A program made the position numbers and the translations under genes. A DNA stretch of 64,000 nt. It comes from Macrostomum lignano. Taxonomy: Eukaryota. Numbering within the stretch: the first letter of the stretch is position 1; the number at the start of each line of letters is the position of its first letter. Location of the stretch: positions 372,001 to 436,000 of the forward strand of contig NIVC01000303.1 in the NCBI GenBank assembly GCA_002269645.1. Direction: 5' to 3'. Shown here in pieces: positions 1 through 43,606 of this stretch. The notes beneath the pieces are model-generated. The model had not been told where the DNA came from, made no database searches, and saw nothing but the letters and a program-made list of their open reading frames with translations.

Positions 1-436
1 AGTTATAACAATATGCTTCTACTCTACTTTGGTTAGTAGCTCGATGTGGGCTTTGGTAATACTTTTTTCGAAGACAGTGAAATGATTTATGTTTATGGTA
101 GTTGATCTGGCTTACTTATTAAATTATTATATTAGGCCAATCGTAATGGTTTATTTTATTCATATAAAAGGTAATAAAATCATTTTGCTTTTTGTGTTGC
201 ATATTGATTGTTTGTATTTTTGTTTGTATTCGACTATTATAATATTTGCTTAGCATTTTTCTGTTTCTGCTTCAAAAAACACGAAAATTGGGTGGCGCTT
301 ACACTTTCACGTTGAAAATACACCACCTTGGTGAAGATTTTTATTTAGCTTTAATTCAAAATCATTAACGAAGCTTCTTTGACATAGCTCTACGAAAACG
401 AAGTTTTCACTGGGTCCGTGTGTGTTATTCTGGGGG

Positions 437-444
437 TATAAATA
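437..444 (+). promoter_or_regulatory. TATA box of Pol III type-3-like promoter of RNase P RNA
   Basis: TATAAATA about 28 bp upstream of the predicted RNA 5' end. Confidence 0.7.
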
Positions 445-464
445 GCTACAAGAGCTGCTACTTA

Positions 465-779
465 GTTGGTCTGGAGCTCCGCTGGCATCAAGGGGTCACT
501 CTACGGGCGCACACATCGCCCTTTAACAAATCACCCTTGGGAAGGTCTGAGTTCGAGCCCCCGTATCCCCTAGCAGGGGAGCCGCCTCTAATCGAGGGCG
601 CCGGCTGACAGAAACGCTTGGGCCATTGGGCTTTGCAAGGAAGCTGGCGACCCAGTTACAGTTGGTTGCCAGCTGAGCATTCCGATGGAGACTCAATTGA
701 GACTGGGCTGGTGGCTGGCCTGTGCAGTGCAATATGCCTTGACAACTCAATTCAGACTACGTAGCGCCAGACCCCAATT
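465..779 (+). ncRNA. RPPH1: Nuclear RNase P RNA (H1/RPR)
   Basis: CR-I CCCTTGGGAAGGTCTGAG (534-551) and CR-V AACTCAATTCAGACTAC (744-760) match the eukaryotic RNase P RNA consensus as recalled from human H1 RNA. P4 pairing GGTCTGA(544-550)/TCAGACT(752-758); P1 pairing 5' TTGGTCTGGAGCT with 3' AGCGCCAGACCCCAA; CR-II-like CAGAAAC; several internal hairpins; ~315 nt GC-rich island. Confidence 0.9.
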
Positions 780-782
780 TTT
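778..782 (+). terminator. Pol III T5 terminator
   Basis: TTTTT directly after the 3' strand of P1. Confidence 0.7.
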
Positions 783-934
783 ATTGCCTTTGCTTCTTGA
801 TTTCTGCTTCAAGTGATTTGCTCCCTTGGCCTTGTGTTTCTGCCAGGCTGTTTACAACGTCTTTTTCTAAATGTAAACTTTTGTTTGTGAGTAATCGGTA
901 ATAACATTAATAATAATATAACAAATCATTCCAG

Positions 935-940
935 GCGGTG
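935..940 (+). CDS. Candidate 6-nt calpain microexon (GCGGTG)
   Basis: tcattccAG|GCGGTG|GTAAGT: acceptor and perfect donor 6 nt apart. Phase 1-1, joins in frame to exon 4441 (..G-E-F-K-F-D-G-F). Confidence 0.55.
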
Positions 941-1302
941 GTAAGTCAGATTTCATTTGCTACATATGCACGAATAGTCCATTCTGTACTTTTATTACAA
1001 GCATATGCCGAATATAACTCGCAGAATTGCCTGCTCTTTCGGATTGCCTGTTCGTTTCTTGCACTTGGTTTTTTATTGTCTACAAGTCACTAAGTGTTTT
1101 GTATAAATTGTTATCCTTTTGCTTTTCTACTGTCTTATTGTTAAAAACTTGTTTATACTACTGATCACTAAAAACATATTTTGTTATTCGGTGTGTTCAA
1201 GAATTGTAGAACTGTACTGTATGTACACTTGTTTTGCTCTGAAATGCTATGAATTTCAGGGACAGGAGCTTAAAGGAGATAGCGGTACTCATTGAAGATT
1301 AA

Positions 1303-1770
1303 ATGAGGGGTAGAGGCTTCTACTGAAGGCCACATGGGGGGTAGAGGCTACTACTGAAGGTTGAATAGGGGTAGAGGCTCCCACTGAAGGTCACATGGGC
1401 GGTAGAGGCTACCACGGAAGGTCACATGGGCGGTAGAGGCTACCACGGAAGGTCACATGGGCGGTAGAGGCTACCACGGAAGGTCACATGGGGGGTAGAG
1501 GCTACCACTGAAGGTCACATGGGCGGTAGAGGCTCCCACTGAAGGTCACATGGGTGGGTAGAGGCTACCACTGAAGGTTACATGGGGGGTAGAGGCTCCC
1601 ACTGAAGGTCACATGGGGGGGGGGGGTAGAGGCTCCCACTGAAGGTCACATGGGGGGGTAGAGGCTCCCACTGAAGGTCACATGGGGGTAGAGAGAGGCT
1701 ACCACTGAAGGTCACATGGGGGTAGAGGCTACCACTGAAGGTTGCATAGGGGTAGAGGCTCCCACTGAAG
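1303..1770. repeat. Minisatellite, ~30-31 bp unit (GGTAGAGGCTACCACTGAAGGTCACATGGGG)
   Basis: About 15 tandem copies with variable G-run length. Confidence 0.95.
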
Positions 1771-2276
1771 TTTGATTCCTGAAGCCCAAGATGTGGGGGC
1801 ATTATGCGGATCTGAAGCGCTGGAAGGTGTTGACATTTGACCTTTGCACGCATTTGTCTGTCACATTCATTTCGGCGCCCCTGCCCCCTTTCTGTGCTGA
1901 ATTGTTGGTTATAATCATGATATTAACAGGTACTAAACACAGTCATTGTTGCCATATAGACATCATAGTACTCCTTTACCATAGACTCTATCTATGATGT
2001 GTTGTTGTGTCTTATTGTAGAAATTCTAGTGGTCACTTTAGAGTTACCATTAAAACAGTTAATTAAAAGTTAATCATATTAACTGTTTACGAATGCTTTT
2101 GTTGGTACTGGGGTTGCTTGTCTAAAGCAATAGTGCTTAACTACTTGAAGTAGTTAGATCTTCACAGTACGCTCTGTCTGAATTTTTGAATATACAAGCA
2201 GACATGTATTTCTTAAAATCTTGTATTTTAAAGTATTGATGTCAGACTTGATGATAATTATATCAGTATTGATGAT

Positions 2277-4392
2277 GACACAATTTTGTGTATGATGCAC
2301 ACTGGTGACCGATGTCAAAGTGACACAACTCTGTGTATGATGCAACACTGGTGACCGATGTCAAAGTGACACAACTCTGTGTATGATGCAACACTGGTGA
2401 CCGATGTCAAAGTGACACAACTCTGTGTATGATGCAACACTGGTGACCGATGTCAAAGTGACACAACTCTGTGTATGATGCAACACTGGTGACCGATGTC
2501 AAAGTGACACAACTCTGTGTATGATGCAACACTGGTGACCGATGTCAAAGTGACACAACTCTGTGTATGATGCAACACTGGTGACCGATGTCAAAGTGAC
2601 ACAACTCTGTGTATGATGCACACTGGTGACCGATGTCAAAGTGACACAACTCTGTGTATGATGCACACTGGTGACCGATGTCAGAGTGACACAACTCTGT
2701 GTATGATGCACACTGGTGACCGATGTCAGAGTGACAATTCTGTGTATGATGCACACTGGTGACCGATGTCAAAGTGACAATTCTGTGTATGATGCACACT
2801 GGTGACCGATGTCAAAGTGACACAACTCTGTGTATGATGCAACACTGGTGACCGATGTCAAAGTGACACAACTCTGTGTATGATGCAACACTGGTGACCG
2901 ATGTCAAAGTGACACAACTCTGTGTATGATGCACACTGGTGACCGATGTCAAAGTGACACAACTCTGTGTATGATGCAACACTGGTGACCGATGTCAAAG
3001 TGACACAACTCTGTGTATGATGCAACACTGGTGACCGATGTCAAAGTGACACAACTCTGTGTATGATGCAACACTGGTGACCGATGTCAAAGTGACACAA
3101 CTCTGTGTATGATGCACACTGGTGACCGATGTCAAAGTGACACAACTCTGTGTATGATGCAACACTGGTGACCGATGTCAAAGTGACACAACTCTGTGTA
3201 TGATGCAACACTGGTGACCGATGTCAAAGTGACACAACTCTGTGTATGATGCAACACTGGTGACCGATGTCAAAGTGACACAACTCTGTGTATGATGCAA
3301 CACTGGTGACCGATGTCAAAGTGACACAACTCTGTGTATGATGCAACACTGGTGACCGATGTCAAAGTGACACAACTCTGTGTATGATGCACACTGGTGA
3401 CCGATGTCAAAGTGACACAACTCTGTGTATGATGCACACTGGTGACCGATGTCAGAGTGACACAACTCTGTGTATGATGCACACTGGTGACCGATGTCAG
3501 AGTGACAACTCTGTGTATGATGCACACTGGTGACCGATGTCAGAGTGACAACTCTGTGTATGATGCACACTGGTGACCGATGTCAGAGTGACACAATTCT
3601 GTGTATGATGCACACTGGTGACCGATGTCAGAGTGACAATTATGTGTATGATGCACACTGGTGACCGATGTCAGAGTGACAACTCTGTGTATGATGCACG
3701 CTGGTGACCGATGTCAGAGTGACACAACTCTGTGTATGATGCACACTGGTGACCGATGTCAGAGTGACAACTCTGTGTATGATGCACACTGGTGACCGAT
3801 GTCAGAGTGACACAATTCTGTGTATGATGCACACTGGTGACCGATGTCAGAGTGACAATTATGTGTATGATGCACACTGGTGACCGATGTCAGAGTGACA
3901 CAACTCTGTGTAAGATGCACACTGGTGACCGATGTCAGAGTGACACAACTCTGTGTATGATGCAACACTGGTGACCGATGTCAGAGTGACAACTCTGTGT
4001 ATGATGCACACTGGTGACCGATGTCAGAGTGACACAATTCTGTGTATGATGCACACTGGTGACCGATGTCAGAGTGACAATTATGTGTATGATGCACACT
4101 GGTGACCGATGTCAGAGTGACAACTCTGTGTATGATGCACGCTGGTGACCGATGTCAGAGTGACACAACTCTGTGTATGATGCACACTGGTGACCGATGT
4201 CAGAGTGACAACTCTGTGTATGATGCACACTGGTGACCGATGTCAGAGTGACACAATTCTGTGTATGATGCACACTGGTGACCGATGTCAGAGTGACAAT
4301 TATGTGTATGATGCACACTGGTGACCGATGTCAGAGTGACACAACTCTGTGTAAGATGCACACTGGTGACCGATGTCAGAGTGACAACTCTG
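2277..4392. repeat. Minisatellite, 41-44 bp unit (GTGTATGATGCACACTGGTGACCGATGTCARAGTGACACAACTCT)
   Basis: About 49 tandem copies in a calpain intron; 441-bp higher-order duplication in the right part. Confidence 0.97.
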
Positions 4393-4440
4393 TAACTGCT
4401 AATAGCCCATGCCCCAATGCCGCTCCTACTAAATCATCAG

Positions 4441-4647
4441 AGTTCAAGTTCGATGGCTTCAGCGTTGAGACGTGTCGCTCAATGGTGGCCCTCATGGACG
4501 TCGACCAGTCCGGCAAGCTGGGCTTCGACGAATTCAAGACTCTGTGGAACGACCTGCGACTGTGGAAGACCGTGTTCAAGAAATACGACAGCGACAAGTC
4601 TGGCAATTTCAACAGCTACGAACTGCGACAGGCGCTTAACGCTGTTG
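4441..4647 (+). CDS. CAPN: Classical calpain, penta-EF-hand domain exon
   Basis: (E)FKFDGFSVETCRSMVALMDVDQSGKLGFDEFKTLWNDLRLWKTVFKKYDSDKSGNFNSYELRQALNAV = calpain domain IV EF-hands; cag acceptor at 4440, GTTAGT donor at 4648. Confidence 0.95.
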
Positions 4648-4784: not shown

Positions 4785-4960
4785 GTTTCCGCGTGAACAA
4801 CAAGATCTTCAGCTGTTTGGTTATGCGCTACGCTACTCGCGAGGGAATTATCGAGTTTGACGACTATGTCCTGTGCTGCGTCCGGCTTAAGACCGTCTTC
4901 GAGACGTTCAAGGCCCAGCCGAAGGACGGCCAGGGCAAAGCTACGTTCTCGCAGGAGGAG
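4785..4960 (+). CDS. CAPN: Calpain PEF domain exon
   Basis: (G)FRVNNKIFSCLVMRYATREGIIEFDDYVLCCVRLKTVFETFK...TFSQEE; tcag acceptor, GTGGGC donor; phase consistent with previous exon. Confidence 0.93.
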
Positions 4961-5017: not shown

Positions 5018-5385
5018 TACCTACCTACCCACCCATCTACCTACCCACTTATTTACCTACCCACCTATCTACCTATCCACTTATTTACCTACCCACCTAT
5101 CTACCTACCCACCTATTTACCTACCCACTTATCTACCAATCTACCTAGCCACCTATTTACTAAATACCTGACCACTCACCTAGTTACCTACCCATCCATC
5201 TACCTACCTATCTACCTACTTACCTGCGGACCTGCCTATCCACCTACCCACCTAACTACCTGTCTATCCACTACCTACTCACCTACCTACCTACCTAGCT
5301 ACCTACCTATCTGCCCATCTGTGTACCTATCTGCCTACCTATCTACCCATCTACTTATCTATCCAACAATCCACCTACCTATCCA
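5018..5385. repeat. Degenerate (ACCT/ACCC)n low-complexity tract
   Basis: ACCTACCCACCTATCT-type repeats filling the last calpain intron. Confidence 0.9.
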
Positions 5386-5460: not shown

Positions 5461-5487
5461 TTCCTGCAGACCATTATTTACGTGTAG
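5461..5487 (+). CDS. CAPN: Calpain terminal coding exon FLQTIIYV*
   Basis: ttgcag acceptor at 5460, phase 0, calpain-like C-terminus, TAG at 5485-5487. Confidence 0.85.
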   Translation, partial: FLQTIIYV

Positions 5488-6831
5488 AAGCCTCAAGAGC
5501 TGGTGGGCTGTGTGCAGCCGGCACCACTCATAACCATGGAATTTCAAAATCAACATTAAGGACCGATCTTTAAAAATGTTGATTCTGTTTGACTGTCCCG
5601 CGGCGTCAATAAACAAGCTCGATTACACATCAATATTAACACGCTAGCTCACAGTGTCTAACCAATGAATAATCTTAATAATTGTTGTTGCTGTCTCCAT
5701 TTTTTTCAAAACAACAGAACTGATAAAGCTTGGATTTTATTAGCAAATTTAGACTAGAATAATATCCCTATGCTAGTTAAGCTACTGTTCAGTAGAACAG
5801 TACAGAAAGTAAAAAATCGCTTTTTGAGTTTATTTAATAATTTGCCGTGTGAACTTTTTTATGTTTTATTTTTTGCTCTGTTGCTAGCCATACACATATT
5901 TAATTTTTTCAAGTATTTATAAGTATTTATATTTATATTTTAATCCCTTAACCAATGCTACATGTTATTGGCCACTTGTGTGTGTGTGTGACCTGCTTGT
6001 AATCAACCCATATGTTTTATACCTATTAATTAATATATACTGTTCTCATACTATTTATACTACTAATATTTGGGACTTAACAACTAACCATCAACCCCCT
6101 GTGCAATTGATCTCTGTTAAACACAGCCAAACATTAATGGCCTGTTTTAATTAATGTAAATTTCATTTTATTTCAATCAATATTTTGCCAGGTACAATTT
6201 TTCATTGAAATACGCCACCAAAGTGTTTAAGTTAACATTTTCAATGTCTACCAGATTAATAGACTCTTTACCAATTATTAACCAATTTTTAAGACCAAAA
6301 AATCCTACAGAATGGTGTTGTCAAATATCCTGTTTCCTCTGCTGCTTTTGCTGGCTTGGTGAAAGTGCTTACAGTCTCACCCTAAGAATCGTTTTTACCT
6401 TAAATAATAGTACCCACCCAGCCGCCTTGAGCTCCAATATGAGAGTTTTTTAATTAGCAGGCCTGAGCAGTAGACGGTGTGATCAACAGTTTTATGGCTC
6501 TTTGTTTTGGTAAACTTTTTATTGCCAGGAAGATCAAGTGTCAGCTTCTGCTATAACCAACACTACTTATAGTAATAGATAGATACATATTTATTTATAA
6601 CTAGTTTCATGAAAAATATAAGCGGAATTCGCCGTGCATGAGTGCGTCAGCTTTTTTCAACAACTTTATTGGCTGCTTATGTAGGCTTGCTGAAGTTTAT
6701 TCATAAATGTTTGCTGTCGTCTCGGTCTTTGTCTTGGAATTTTTTTAATGAAATGTATGCAGTGGTAACTGTATGTTACCTTAACTTTCTTCTCGGGTCG
6801 TAGTTCCATTCTCAACGTGAACAAAGTGAAC

Positions 6832-7787
6832 TCACGGGTCACGGCCGGCTCCGTTCACACAGCGTATTAACGGGTCACAGTTCGATTCACACAGTGTATT
6901 CACGGGTCACAGTTCGATCCACACAGTATATTCACAGGTCACAGTTCGATTCACACAGTGTATTCACGGGTCACAGTTCGATTCACAGTGTATTCACGGG
7001 TCACATTTCGATTCACACAGTGTATTCACGGGTCACAGTTCGATCCACACAGTATATTCACAGGTCACAGTTCGATTCACACAGTATATTCACGGGTCAC
7101 AGTTCGATCCACACAGTATATTCACGGGTCACAGCAGTCACATTCACACAGTGTATTCACGGGTCACAGTTCGATCCACACAGTATATTCACAGGTCACA
7201 GTTCGATTCACACAGTATATTCACGGGTCACAGCAGTCACATTCACACAGTGTATTCACGGGTCACAGCAGTCAGTCACATTCACACAGTGTATTCACGG
7301 GTCACAGCAGTCATATTCACACAGTGTATTCACGCGTCACAGCAGTCACATTCACACAGTGTATTCACGGGTCACAGCAGTCACATTCACACAGTGTATT
7401 CACGGGTCACAGCAGTCACATTCACACAGTGTATTCACGGGTCACAGCAGTAACATTCACAGTGTATTCACGGGTCACAGCAGTCACATTCACACAGTGT
7501 ATTCACGGGTCACAGCAGTCACATTCACACAGTGTATTCACGGGTCACAGCAGTCACATTCACACAGTGTATTCACGGGTCACAGCAGTAACATTCACAG
7601 TGTATTCACGGGTCACAGCAGTCACATTCACACAGTGTATTCACGGGTCACAGCAGTAACATTCACAGTGTATTCACGGGTCACAGCAGTCACATTCACA
7701 CAGTGTATTCACGGGTCACAGCAGTCACATTCACACAGTGTATTCACGGGTCACAGCAGTCACATTCACACAGTGTATTCACGGGTC
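6832..7787. repeat. Minisatellite, 32/35 bp unit (CACAGTGTATTCACGGGTCACAG...)
   Basis: The left portion carries the TTCGATTCA variant (32 bp) and the right portion the CAGTCACATTCA variant (35 bp). Confidence 0.95.
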
Positions 7788-23054: not shown

Positions 23055-25266
23055 CAAGCTGTTGAAACCCGCGGATTTTGAACCTGGGGAATTCAAATCC
23101 CCGGAACCATTTTTGCATGTATTTTAAAATCCAAAGTCATACTCAAAACTTGTTAATAGTTGGATAGAGGTGTGAACGAAACTTGGTATAAATGTGTATT
23201 AAAAAGTATATTTCTTTTTATATTCCTGGTTAACTGGTTGCTTCGCAGTTCCAAAACAATGTCTCGCTTTTCAAATTGTTGACCAACAATTTGAATGGCA
23301 ACGTCGTCAACAACAGGTGCATTGAATCTTCTTTCGTGTTGGCCAGCAGGCGTCTTTGTTGCGTGAATGACAACTCGAAGTTCCTCTACATTTGGAGGTA
23401 GCCGCTCCATAGCAGTTTTGAAATCGCGCACGTACTTGTTATGCGCATGCATAATTTCCTGTAGCTCAAAAACAATGTTAGGTCTCACACCTGGAGCAAT
23501 CCTACATCGGCGCTCAACTTCCTCGTGGCTGTCTCCCATGAAGTAGATCTGCAGGAACTTTGGCTCCTCTCCTTGCAGCGGCATCAACGATCCCACCAGA
23601 TGGTACACCTGCCCTTGGACTTTAAAAGTAGGCATGAAGCCTGGCTCTTCAACTATTCTTTCAGCTCCAAAAGAAGTGAACTGAAAACAGCTATTGTATC
23701 GTCGAATGTTGGACAGAAAATGATCCGATTCCTCAGAGTTACCCAGCAACAAATGGCGAAGATAGTCTGGTAGATTCTCATTCAGAGGAGTGAGTCTGAC
23801 TTTTCCATTGCTACAACACATGCCAGGTGTCTCATTTGCCCACCTCAACGCATTGCAATGCTGACATTTCTTCGACATTCTTTCGATAGCAAGCTTTGGG
23901 TGGCTGCTATAAACAAAAGTAGGATCATAATTTAGAGCAAAGCTTAGGGCCCAAGGAGGTGGTCCAATTGCTTGCTCAGATTCGTCATGGGCAACGTCTT
24001 GCTCAATAAATCGATAGGCCGCAGCGCGTTCTATGTGGCGTCTTCGATCGTCTTCACGGCGCACTCCAGCTTCACCCGTCGTTTCATTGCGTCGTGCCTC
24101 TGCGGTCTGATCTCTGTCCCGCTCCTGTCGTTGCCGAGTCTGGACAGTCGTTTCATTGCGTCGTGCCTCTGCGGTCTGATCTCTGTCCCGCTCCTGTCGT
24201 TGCTGAGTCTGGACAGTCGTTTCATTGCGTCGTGCCTCTGCGGTCTGATCTCTGTCCCGTTCCCGTCGTTGCTGAGTCTGGACAGTCGTTTCATTGCGTC
24301 GTGCCTCTGCGGTCTGATCTCTGTCCCGTTCCTGTCGTTGCTGAGTCTGAACAGTCGTTTCATTGCGTCGTGCCTCGGCTGTTTGCTGTCTTTTTTGTTC
24401 ACGTCGTCTTTCTTCCCAATTTGCAGCACTGAGAGGAACCTGTGTACTTCCAGTTCCATCGGAAGTGCTGGCGCCGGCTGCTGATGTCGATGATCTTGTC
24501 GGTGGTCGAAGGCTTCTTTTCTGGGCTTGTTCTCCTAAGGCACTTGCACTCGATCTGGCCTGGGCAGAGCTACCTGTGTTGTCTGCTTCCTCTGTGCTAT
24601 GTGATGTTCCTGCTTCAGCCGCATTGCTTTGCCTTGTAGATCTCCATCGTCTAGCTGCAGCAGTGAAACGACCCAATGCGCTTTTCTTTGGGGGCATTTG
24701 AATTTTAAAGTGCCTTTAAATAGGACTTAGTGTTACAAATTCTATTTTGTGTGACTAATTCAGGAATCAGGATTGCATCGTATCGCTTTTTGTACCACAG
24801 ACAACTATGCTAGTCTTATCGATTGCCATCTTCCTCATCCAAGAAAGAAAGAAAGGCAGGCGGGCGGAGGTTGGGGTGGCTGTCTCGCTGAAAAAAACAG
24901 CCAAACTTTAAAAGTGCACAGCGCCGTTCAGGATTAACTTTGAGACTCGAAATTTTACATGATTGTGCCAAAATAGTTAAAGATTATCTGTGTCAAATTT
25001 GAAGAGGATCAGTAGAAGTGGAGCGGCGCTATGGAGGATTAAGTGAAAAAATCGCGCATTTTGAGCAGTTTTTTGTACTTTTAGGTAGGAAGACTCAAAT
25101 TTAGGAAATTTTAAGGTAGCCTAAGACATTCTCCGTAGTAAGTTTAGGGTGGGTGTAAAGTTTGGTGTAATTTGGTTGAGCGGTTTGGGAGTCCATAGCG
25201 AAGTAATTTGTCCACAGACAGACAGACAGACAGACAGAGTTTTGATTTTTATATGTAGAGAAGAGA
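23055..25266 (-). mobile_element. Helitron internal-deletion derivative with both termini
   Basis: 5' end A|TCTCTTCTCTACATATAAAAATC followed by (GTCT)n. 3' end has the hairpin GGGGATTTGAATTCCCC and ...CCGCGGGTTTCAACAGCTTG|T. Inserted between A and T; contains the RepHel N-terminal ORF. Confidence 0.8.
23153..24697 (-). CDS. Helitron RepHel N-terminal fragment (514 aa)
   Basis: CQHCNALRWANETPGMCCSNGKV zinc motif, FLSNIRRYNSCFQFTSFG, FKVQGQVYHLVGSL, PKFLQIYF, RRFNAP..VAI, RDIVL = conserved Helitron N-region; 23-aa tandem repeats near the N-terminus; homology ends at NQLTR, before Rep and helicase. Confidence 0.9.
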   Translation of the reverse strand: MPPKKSALGRFTAAARRWRSTRQSNAAEAGTSHSTEEADNTGSSAQARSSASALGEQAQKRSLRPPTRSSTSAAGASTSDGTGSTQVPLSAANWEERRREQKRQQTAEARRNETTVQTQQRQERDRDQTAEARRNETTVQTQQRRERDRDQTAEARRNETTVQTQQRQERDRDQTAEARRNETTVQTRQRQERDRDQTAEARRNETTGEAGVRREDDRRRHIERAAAYRFIEQDVAHDESEQAIGPPPWALSFALNYDPTFVYSSHPKLAIERMSKKCQHCNALRWANETPGMCCSNGKVRLTPLNENLPDYLRHLLLGNSEESDHFLSNIRRYNSCFQFTSFGAERIVEEPGFMPTFKVQGQVYHLVGSLMPLQGEEPKFLQIYFMGDSHEEVERRCRIAPGVRPNIVFELQEIMHAHNKYVRDFKTAMERLPPNVEELRVVIHATKTPAGQHERRFNAPVVDDVAIQIVGQQFEKRDIVLELRSNQLTRNIKRNILFNTHLYQVSFTPLSNY

Positions 25267-42366: not shown

Positions 42367-42689
42367 CTGAAGTTTCAGGTAATGCAGAAATTTAAAAGCA
42401 AACTCCAAAGCAGGGGGGACGGCAAATTCCGTCCAAGGAAGACTCTCTATCCGACCCTCAGGTCCTTTGGAACTTCACAATAGCAATCTGGCCCACTTGA
42501 TGTATACATGTGTATCTCTTCTCAGCGCCCTCCCTCTCAATTCTCTCTAATCTCCTCTCATGATTCACATAGGATGTACACGAGTCCTATTTGAGTCATG
42601 CACCCTATGTTGCATCCTATGTGGACTGCCACTTTGATTAGCAAGCTAACAAACAAACAAACGAATAGTTCTTCAGAACCCAGTCTCAC

Positions 42690-43606
42690 CTTTGTCAAAA
42701 GTACTCAGAGCAAACGCTTCGGTCTTCTCTTGGCCGTCCTCCTGAAAGCTCAACATCCGGTACGCTTGACACCTGCCGGAGGTGAGAAAGTACAACCAGT
42801 CGTTACGCTCGCCCTGTTTCAGCACCAGCGAGTCGGGACGCAGGTTCTCCTTCACCAGATGGGGCACCAGGGCCTCTTTCTCCGACACTGGCAACTGACT
42901 GAGGAAGTTCCACTCGGCGTTGAGGAAATCGATTGTTTCGTTACGCAGTTGCGCCTCGATGTTGCGCATCAGGGCGTGGAACTTGGCCCGATCGACGCGC
43001 AGCAGCTCGCAATCGGTCTTACAGTACAGCGTCGCCGGCGGTGCCAAATCGCCTTGGTCCTCGTCGCCGTGGCTGAGCAGGCCGAGGTACTCGCCCATGC
43101 CGTGAGTGTACACGATGTTGGGCTGGAACATCTGCTGCGACACCGTCACTCTGTCGTCGTCGTCAGCAGGTGCCGCTGGCTCGTACGTGGCCTCGAGGCT
43201 GCCGTGCAGGATGTAGTAACAGGAGAACTGCTCCTCGTGCGTTCGCTTCTGCAAGTAGTCGAACGCTTTGTACACCTCATGCGTCAGACTGTTGGCGATG
43301 GCCAGTTTCACGTGACTCCTGCCCCGGTGAATCAGGCGCAAGCTGTCAATAATATTTTTCAATACTAGACGTTCGGAGTCGCTCAAGTGGAATTTGTGCT
43401 CCCGTTCCAGCTGCTCGTTTCGCTTCATCACTCGCGCGGCTGTGGCCGTGATAGCAATGCTGCCGACGCCGAAGATTCGTCGGTTGAAGATCGGCGGCCC
43501 CTGACTGTCGCGACCGCCGCTGCGCTGTTTCTCCTCTTCGCGCGCTTTCGCCGTGGCCTCAATGAACGACTTGCGCTCGTTGAGGCGCTGGAGCAGGCCG
43601 AGCATG
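42690..43606 (-). CDS. CNBD1/2-like cyclic nucleotide-binding domain protein, main exon
   Basis: Two cNMP-binding-like domains: FSCYYILHGSL..GMGEYLGLL..LYCKTDCELLRVDRAKF and LVLKQGERNDWLYFLTSGRC. Acceptor ctctataag at 43607, donor GTGAGA at 42689. An upstream exon is unresolved. Confidence 0.85.

What the first reader, a model, noticed from the sequence alone, without database searches (positions are those of the whole stretch)
437..782. RNase P RNA gene nested on the sense strand of a calpain intron but with its own Pol III signals
Seen: all hallmark RNase P motifs, a TATA box ~28 bp upstream and a T5 terminator. The calpain exon at 4441 begins mid-domain, and the only upstream exon candidate in the window is the microexon at 935, so the RPR most likely lies in a calpain intron. 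Known: vertebrate RPR is a free-standing Pol III type-3 gene, while insects and crustaceans embed it in Pol II host introns without Pol III signals. An intronic location with intact Pol III signals would be a hybrid or intermediate arrangement. RPR genes are also often missed by annotation.
Basis: partly seen in the sequence, partly recalled or inferred. Interest (0 to 1): 0.7.

Follow-up and report, generated by a model that had tools for sequence, protein, structure and literature searches.

The report
Flatworm RNase P RNA gene, likely intronic
This is an ordinary nuclear RNase P RNA gene with its own RNA polymerase III start and stop signals, from the flatworm Macrostomum lignano or a very close relative; it probably sits inside a long intron of a calpain gene, which is a common place for such small RNA genes and not a sign of an evolutionary intermediate.

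Summary
Rfam's nuclear RNase P model (RF00009) matches window 470-771 (+) end to end at 97.8 bits (threshold 28, E 8e-27). A perfect TATAAATA lies at 437-444, and a T5 run at 778-782 follows the closing helix. Among 41 other complete RNase P RNA genes from environmental eukaryote contigs, TATA boxes cluster 33-37 nt upstream and T runs 3-11 nt downstream of the model match. The window has -33 and +7, so it is a typical stand-alone Pol III type-3 gene.

The organism is Macrostomum lignano or a very close relative: a neighbouring ORF is 99% identical to one of its proteins.

The intron claim is probable but not shown. The window holds only the last three exons of a calpain-type penta-EF-hand tail (about 4406/4441-4647, 4785-4960, 5461-5487). 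These have no usable start codon. The conserved EF-hand-1 exon is absent from the 4.4 kb upstream, so earlier exons should lie beyond the window start.

The "hybrid or intermediate" reading is not supported. Independently transcribed small RNA genes inside host introns are well known. Nothing suggests dependence on the host transcript. Five calpain loci from other animals carry no RNase P RNA gene. Interest is low.

The parts
404..424 (+). Candidate position of a proximal sequence element (PSE), 64 to 44 nt before the predicted start G468. Unverified.
   Evidence: Position only. Type-3 promoters carry a PSE about 20-35 nt upstream of the TATA box. The Schistosoma japonicum U6 gene has its PSE at -71..-51 and TATA at -36..-31 (PMC5460494). 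Several environmental RNase P RNA genes show a CCCA(C/T)AA-like block at that distance, but the window sequence does not clearly match it. No other M. lignano snRNA gene was available for comparison.
437..444 (+). TATA box (TATAAATA) of the Pol III type-3 promoter
   Evidence: It starts 33 nt before the Rfam model start and ends 23 nt before G468. This falls in the 21-27 nt range reported for Pol III RNase P RNA genes (PMC4287351) and in the modal class of the 41-gene yardstick.
468..777 (+). Predicted RNase P RNA, about 310 nt plus a few terminal U. The Rfam match covers 470-771.
   Evidence: RF00009, 97.8 bits, E 8e-27, full model. CR-I to CR-V located. P1 formed by 468-474 with 767-773; no internal T4 run.
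778..782 (+). Pol III terminator (T5)
   Evidence: It starts 7 nt after the model end. 23 of 41 yardstick genes have a T4+ run within 15 nt of the model end, most at 3-11 nt.
1303..4393 (.). Tandem repeats that fill most of the presumed intron between the RNA gene and the next exon: a 31-bp unit x15 at 1303-1770 and a 46-bp unit x47 at 2276-4393.
4406..4647 (+). Calpain-type penta-EF-hand exon (EF-hands 2-3). The acceptor is at 4405|4406 or, matching the conserved intron position, at 4440|4441. The exon starts inside a codon.
   Evidence: It is 80% identical to P0001 over 71 aa. The first in-frame ATG is not reached until the 'CRSM' codons.
4785..4960 (+). Calpain-type penta-EF-hand exon (EF-hands 4-5)
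5461..5487 (+). Last coding exon (FLQTIIYV, then stop). An AATAAA signal follows at 5608.
   Evidence: It matches the calpain C-terminus of homologues, for example FIQTTMYS.

Best explanation
Window 468-777 (+) is the gene for the RNA subunit of nuclear RNase P of Macrostomum lignano or a very close relative.

It is transcribed on its own by RNA polymerase III from an external (type-3) promoter. The TATA box is at 437-444, and a presumed but unverified upstream element lies near 404-424. Transcription starts about G468 and ends in the T5 run at 778-782. The result is a roughly 310-nt RNA with near-mature ends.

The gene most likely lies, in sense orientation, inside an intron of at least 4.4 kb in a calpain-type gene. 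That intron is rich in tandem repeats and precedes the EF-hand-2 exon. Pol II would simply read through the RNA gene, and the two genes would be expressed independently.

Shown: the identity and completeness of the RNA, and the placement of the TATA box and terminator. Inferred: Pol III use, the exact ends of the RNA, and the intronic position.
For: - RNA identity: full-length RF00009 hit at 97.8 bits, with all conserved regions and the P4 pairing present and P1 formed.
- Pol III geometry: in 41 complete RNase P RNA genes from environmental contigs, 16 have TATAWW starting at -40..-22, mostly -33..-37. 23 have a T4+ run within 15 nt after the model end. The window has -33 and +7. This agrees with published criteria: TATA 21-27 nt upstream and a T4-5 stretch at the 3' end (PMC4287351).
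- Chance is a poor explanation: TATAAATA occurs 6 times per 64 kb on this strand, and T5+ runs 2.6 per kb.
- The RNA has no internal T4 run. No flanking target-site duplication of 7 nt or more was found, which argues against a retrocopy.
- Organism: the ORF at 42673-43605(-) is 99% identical to an M. lignano protein.
- Host gene: three spliceable exons give an intact C-terminal penta-EF-hand tail followed by a poly(A) signal.
- The EF-hand-1 exon is absent from 1-4420 in all frames.
- In Lamellibrachia and in two unnamed animals, the protease and domain-III exons lie upstream of the EF-hand exons on the same strand. In Lamellibrachia the EF-hand-1 exon and the matching 4.6-kb intron were also placed by tblastn.
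Against: - No transcript data and no sequence upstream of window position 1 could be obtained, so the host gene's 5' exons are unseen.
- No M. lignano protein in the database contains these EF-hand exons. The deposited annotation excluded transcripts overlapping repeats and all non-coding RNAs, which may explain this (PMC5730564).
- The intron would be several times the species' average of 1.1-1.4 kb.
- A PSE could not be verified.
- The genome is partly duplicated, so this copy may be one of several and need not be the expressed one.
- The thermodynamic fold is only mildly better than shuffled sequence (z = -1.6), as is common for pseudoknotted RNAs.
Confidence: 0.75

Rival explanations
1. 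The RNA gene is intergenic. The three EF-hand exons are either a 3' fragment of a partly duplicated calpain gene, or a separate short transcription unit whose first exon or spliced-leader acceptor lies between 783 and 4440.
For: The 5' exons are not in the window. No M. lignano protein with this tail is in the database. The genome has extensive recent duplication, and 38.8% of its genes are trans-spliced (PMC5730564). Short gene models that begin at this exon exist elsewhere, such as P0004 and P0005.
Against: The exon begins inside a codon, and the first in-frame ATG lies within EF-hand 2, so a stand-alone product would lack EF-hand 1. The Lamellibrachia short model P0004 is an annotation split: its EF-hand-1 exon and protease exons lie just upstream. 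The three exons are intact, well conserved and followed by AATAAA.
Confidence: 0.2
2. Insect-like or dual biogenesis. The RNA is made wholly or partly by Pol II as part of the calpain pre-mRNA and trimmed out of the intron, so the locus would be a living intermediate between the two known modes.
For: Sense orientation within the presumed intron. A transitional state has been proposed in the literature (PMC6797745). Any host transcript would contain the RNA sequence.
Against: The gene carries a complete, correctly spaced Pol III signal set identical in geometry to free-standing genes. Insect and crustacean genes are defined by lacking these signals (PMC4287351). In C. elegans, intronic RNA loci with their own upstream motifs are expressed independently of the host (PMC2527325). 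No RNase P RNA gene lies near the calpain EF-hand exons in 5 other animal loci, so the linkage looks incidental.
Confidence: 0.05
3. This is a non-functional or redundant paralogous copy (pseudogene) of the RNase P RNA gene in a partly duplicated genome.
For: [quoted passage not shown] The bit score of 97.8 is in the lower half of the 74-203 range seen in the yardstick set.
Against: The model match is full length with all conserved regions, only four non-standard pairs, and intact promoter and terminator. There is no sign of retroposition. The score is typical for lineages distant from the Rfam seed.
Confidence: 0.1

Closest known systems
Free-standing Pol III type-3 RNase P RNA genes of most animals (for example human RPPH1/H1 RNA, and those of molluscs, annelids, chelicerates and sponge described in PMC4287351)
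   Same: Same RNA family. Both have an external promoter with a TATA box 21-27 nt upstream, a T4-5 terminator directly after P1, and an RNA made with near-mature ends.
   Different: Those genes were reported as intergenic. This one probably lies within a host-gene intron. The PSE is not verified here.
Strigamia maritima (centipede) RNase P RNA gene
   Same: An RNase P RNA gene with typical Pol III signals located inside an intron of a protein-coding gene (PMC4287351).
   Different: The centipede gene is antisense to its host. This one is in the same orientation as the calpain exons.
[quoted passage not shown]
   Same: Sense orientation within a Pol II host intron, if the inference here holds.
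   Different: Those genes lack a PSE, a TATA box and a positioned terminator. They depend on the host promoter, splicing and exonuclease trimming (PMC4287351, PMC6797745). This gene has the Pol III signals.
Independently transcribed intronic small RNA genes (C. elegans loci with upstream motifs)
   Same: A self-contained small-RNA transcription unit nested in a host intron and expressed independently of the host (PMC2527325).
   Different: A different RNA class and species. Independence is not tested here.

Membership tests
Nuclear RNase P RNA (Rfam RF00009) | Covariance-model score above the curated threshold over the full model | tested here: met
   97.8 bits against a gathering score of 28, E 8.3e-27, model 1-301 of 301.
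Nuclear RNase P RNA (Rfam RF00009) | Conserved regions CR-I to CR-V, with the P4 pseudoknot formed between CR-I and CR-V | tested here: met
   CR-I 539-551, CR-II 608-614, CR-III 694-702, CR-IV 726-733, CR-V 744-760. GUCUGA and UCAGAC are complementary. P4 brackets are aligned.
Nuclear RNase P RNA (Rfam RF00009) | Closing helix P1 and the eukaryote-type helix-loop-helix P3 | tested here: met
   P1 pairs 468-478 with 763-773. P3 is aligned with high posterior probability.
Nuclear RNase P RNA (Rfam RF00009) | Assembles into the holoenzyme and cleaves pre-tRNA 5' leaders | not testable with these tools
   Needs biochemistry.
Pol III type-3 (external promoter) genes | TATA box about 25-30 nt upstream of the start | tested here: met
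   TATAAATA at 437-444 is -31..-24 relative to G468. This is the modal position in 41 control genes.
Pol III type-3 (external promoter) genes | Proximal sequence element about 45-70 nt upstream, shared with the species' own U6, 7SK and MRP genes | tested here: inconclusive
   The window holds no other snRNA gene and no M. lignano snRNA loci were reachable. Comparison with environmental genes gave no clear match.
Pol III type-3 (external promoter) genes | A run of at least 4 T directly after the RNA and none inside it | tested here: met
   T5 at 778-782. Only TTT runs occur inside the RNA, at 522 and 632.
Pol III type-3 (external promoter) genes | Distal enhancer with an octamer motif about 200-250 nt upstream | tested here: inconclusive
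   The only candidate is a one-mismatch octamer, ATTTGCTT, at 244-251, about -224. This is weak evidence in AT-rich DNA.
Pol III type-3 (external promoter) genes | Pol III occupancy and a 5'-triphosphate transcript | not testable with these tools
   Needs ChIP and RNA end mapping.
Insect/crustacean-type intron-embedded, Pol II-dependent RNase P RNA gene | Lies in an intron of a Pol II gene in the same orientation | tested here: inconclusive
   Same strand as the calpain-type exons. The EF-hand-1 exon is absent from 1-4420, so upstream exons are inferred to lie beyond the window. No transcript evidence.
Insect/crustacean-type intron-embedded, Pol II-dependent RNase P RNA gene | Lacks a PSE, a positioned TATA box and a positioned terminator | tested here: not met
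   A TATA box and a T5 run are present at canonical distances.
Classical calpain (host gene) | C-terminal penta-EF-hand domain | tested here: met
   EF-hand Pfam families hit the joined exons. They are 57-67% identical to calpain tails. The C-terminus FLQTIIYV is present. EF-hand 1 is not in the window.
Classical calpain (host gene) | Peptidase C2 catalytic domain and calpain domain III upstream in the same gene | not testable with these tools
   These would lie upstream of window position 1. They are present upstream in Lamellibrachia and in two unnamed animals.

The most novel reading that the evidence does not exclude
The flatworm RNase P RNA gene sits in sense orientation in a calpain intron while keeping full Pol III signals, and a measurable share of the mature RNA is salvaged from the host's spliced intron. 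This would make it a living example of the transitional state proposed for the origin of the insect/crustacean intronic gene.
Probability: 0.05. Interest if true: 0.5.

Novelty: new member of a known kind. Interest (0 to 1): 0.2.

Why it matters
The finding gives a usable annotation for an essential non-coding RNA gene in a regeneration model flatworm. The deposited genome annotation for that species left out non-coding RNAs and transcripts overlapping repeats (PMC5730564).

The roughly 70 bp upstream of the RNA is a candidate endogenous Pol III promoter. It could be tried for guide-RNA or hairpin expression in Macrostomum.

If the intronic position is confirmed, this would be a sense-oriented counterpart to the centipede case. 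It would show that location in an intron and loss of Pol III signals are separable steps. That is a modest point, not a new mechanism.

Tried and rejected
- Microexon at 935 (GCGGTG between cag and gtaagt): nothing supports it beyond splice-like letters. It would not change the conclusion, because it lies downstream of the RNA gene.
- Upstream host exons in the window: tblastn with 11 homologues and a maximum-sensitivity HMM of the EF-hand-1 exon against six frames of 1-4420 found nothing.
- A splice-compatible ATG-containing stretch at 13-31 with donor G|GTTAGT would join in frame to an acceptor at 4440|4441. It is AT-rich and has no homology, so I treat it as chance. It would also leave the RNA gene intronic.
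- Fetching the source genome: exact-product look-ups for the window ORF at 42673-43605 and for the M. lignano protein P0012 found no record.
- Searching for a close relative of the RNA to footprint the promoter: 79 environmental loci were found, but none resembles the window outside the universal core; the best match is 21 nt.
- Synteny: no RNase P RNA gene within 10 kb of the calpain EF-hand exons in Lamellibrachia or in four unnamed animal contigs.
- Panel B of the published promoter alignment (PMC4287351, S2 Fig) is not in the stored text.
- Retrocopy origin was rejected: no flanking direct repeat of 7 nt or more, no A-tail, and the promoter is present.
- Spliced-leader start: the first in-frame ATG after either acceptor lies within EF-hand 2.

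Full report
**What is there**

A covariance-model scan of all 64 kb against Rfam gives a single hit, nuclear RNase P RNA (RF00009), at 470-771 on the + strand. It scores 97.8 bits against a curated threshold of 28, with E 8e-27, and covers the whole model.

The conserved regions are all in place:
- CR-I at 539-551
- CR-II at 608-614
- CR-III at 694-702
- CR-IV at 726-733
- CR-V at 744-760

The two strands of the P4 pseudoknot are complementary. The closing helix P1 can be extended by two G-C pairs to 468/773, and an energy-based fold forms the same helix. I therefore place the RNA at about 468-777 plus a few terminal U.

**Start and stop signals**

A perfect TATAAATA lies at 437-444 and ends 23 nt before G468. 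A T5 run at 778-782 begins 7 nt after the model end. No run of four T occurs inside the RNA.

These placements are unlikely by chance. TATAAATA occurs six times on this strand in 64 kb, and T5+ runs occur 2.6 times per kb.

As a yardstick I collected environmental eukaryote contigs that carry the CR-I...CR-V pattern, then located 41 complete RF00009 hits in 40 of them, scoring 74-203 bits. Results:
- 16 have a TATA-like hexamer starting at -40..-22, mostly at -33 to -37.
- 23 have a T4+ run within 15 nt of the model end, mostly at +3 to +11.
- The two signals usually occur together.
- The window scores -33 and +7, so it belongs to the modal class.

This matches the published description of Pol III-type RNase P RNA genes: TATA 21-27 nt upstream and a 4-5 T stretch at the 3' end (PMC4287351).

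The third promoter element, the PSE, could not be checked. It is lineage-specific, and no other small nuclear RNA gene of this species was available. Only its expected position, about 404-424, can be named.

**Organism**

An ORF with a cyclic-nucleotide-binding domain at 42673-43605 (-) is 99% identical to a UniRef protein of Macrostomum lignano. The many tandem repeats in the window fit that genome, in which simple and tandem repeats make up 15% (PMC5730564).

**The host gene**

Downstream on the same strand lie three exons that join in frame to give the C-terminal part of a calpain-type penta-EF-hand domain. It ends FLQTIIYV-stop, with AATAAA 120 nt further on:
- 4406-4647, with an alternative acceptor at 4440|4441
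- 4785-4960
- 5461-5487

The first of these exons starts inside a codon, at the intron position that is conserved in the annelid Lamellibrachia. No in-frame ATG occurs before the middle of EF-hand 2.

The preceding, well-conserved EF-hand-1 exon is not found in window 1-4420. tblastn with 11 homologues and a maximum-sensitivity HMM search of all six frames both came up empty.

In Lamellibrachia the so-called 'calpain small subunit' model is an annotation split. The EF-hand-1 exon lies 4.6 kb upstream of the matching exon, and a Peptidase_C2 plus Calpain_III gene call lies before that on the same strand. Two unnamed animal contigs show protease or domain-III exons upstream as well.

The simplest reading is that the 5' exons of the Macrostomum gene lie before window position 1. 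The RNase P RNA gene would then sit in an intron of at least 4.4 kb, most of it tandem repeat. This is an inference. I could not obtain the upstream sequence or any transcript, and no M. lignano protein in the database contains these exons. The deposited annotation dropped transcripts overlapping repeats, which may explain that gap. I put the intronic position at about 0.7-0.8.

**How it most likely works**

Pol III, recruited through the TATA box and a presumed PSE, starts near G468 and stops in the T5 run. This gives an RNA with near-mature ends that assembles with the protein subunits. Pol II transcribing the calpain gene would pass through the locus, and the intron would be spliced out and degraded.

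Nothing suggests that the RNA depends on the host:
- It has the full signal set of free-standing genes.
- In C. elegans, intronic RNA loci with their own upstream motifs are expressed independently of the host (PMC2527325).
- The linkage to calpain is absent in all five other animal loci examined.

**Comparison with what is known**

The gene belongs with the ordinary Pol III-type RNase P RNA genes of non-insect animals. It does not belong to the insect/crustacean intron-embedded type, whose defining feature is the absence of Pol III signals (PMC4287351, PMC6797745).

An intronic Pol III-type RNase P RNA gene is already on record in the centipede Strigamia, in antisense orientation. A sense-oriented one is a small variation in placement.

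The 'hybrid or intermediate' idea echoes a transition proposed in the literature. It would need evidence that the host transcript contributes to the mature RNA. There is none, and I give it about 5%.

**Verdict**

It is a new member of a known kind, useful mainly as an annotation and as a candidate endogenous Pol III promoter for a model flatworm.

Noticed in passing
L072:1-1424 and L065:241-940 (environmental contigs): Some environmental eukaryote contigs carry RNase P RNA genes in head-to-tail arrays. L072 has a full copy at 547-853 (203 bits) flanked by partial copies at both contig ends, with a period of about 729 nt. L065 has two full copies about 395 nt apart. L077 has two pattern matches in opposite orientation.
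   Followed up: no
window:8499-11984: A 22-bp satellite (TACTAACCAAACTACTGTAATC) in about 158 copies, 93% matching, with strong C-over-G skew. Further arrays: a 35-bp unit at 6984-7787 and a 16-bp unit at 5021-5312, directly after the calpain stop codon.
   Followed up: no
window:42673-43605 (-): A 310-aa ORF with a cyclic-nucleotide-binding domain. It is 99% identical to a 182-aa M. lignano UniRef protein over 36% of its length, so the public model is shorter than this ORF and may be incomplete.
   Followed up: partly
window:20937-21632 (-) and 23153-24697 (-): Likely remnants of mobile elements. One ORF has an RNase H domain tail (Pfam). A 514-aa ORF has a 24-residue internal repeat and no Pfam hit; it looked Helitron-like by eye only.
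   Followed up: no
L001:13890-16000: In the Lamellibrachia calpain locus, the short exon end encoding LRCVIRMKTMF is repeated about 45 times at 44-88-nt spacing inside the following intron. This is a tandem array seeded from an exon-intron boundary.
   Followed up: no
window:13-37 (+): ATG CTT CTA CTC TAC TTT G followed by GTTAGT, the same donor hexamer as the calpain exon at 4647. It would splice in frame to an acceptor at 4440|4441. It is AT-rich with no homology, so probably chance.
   Followed up: partly
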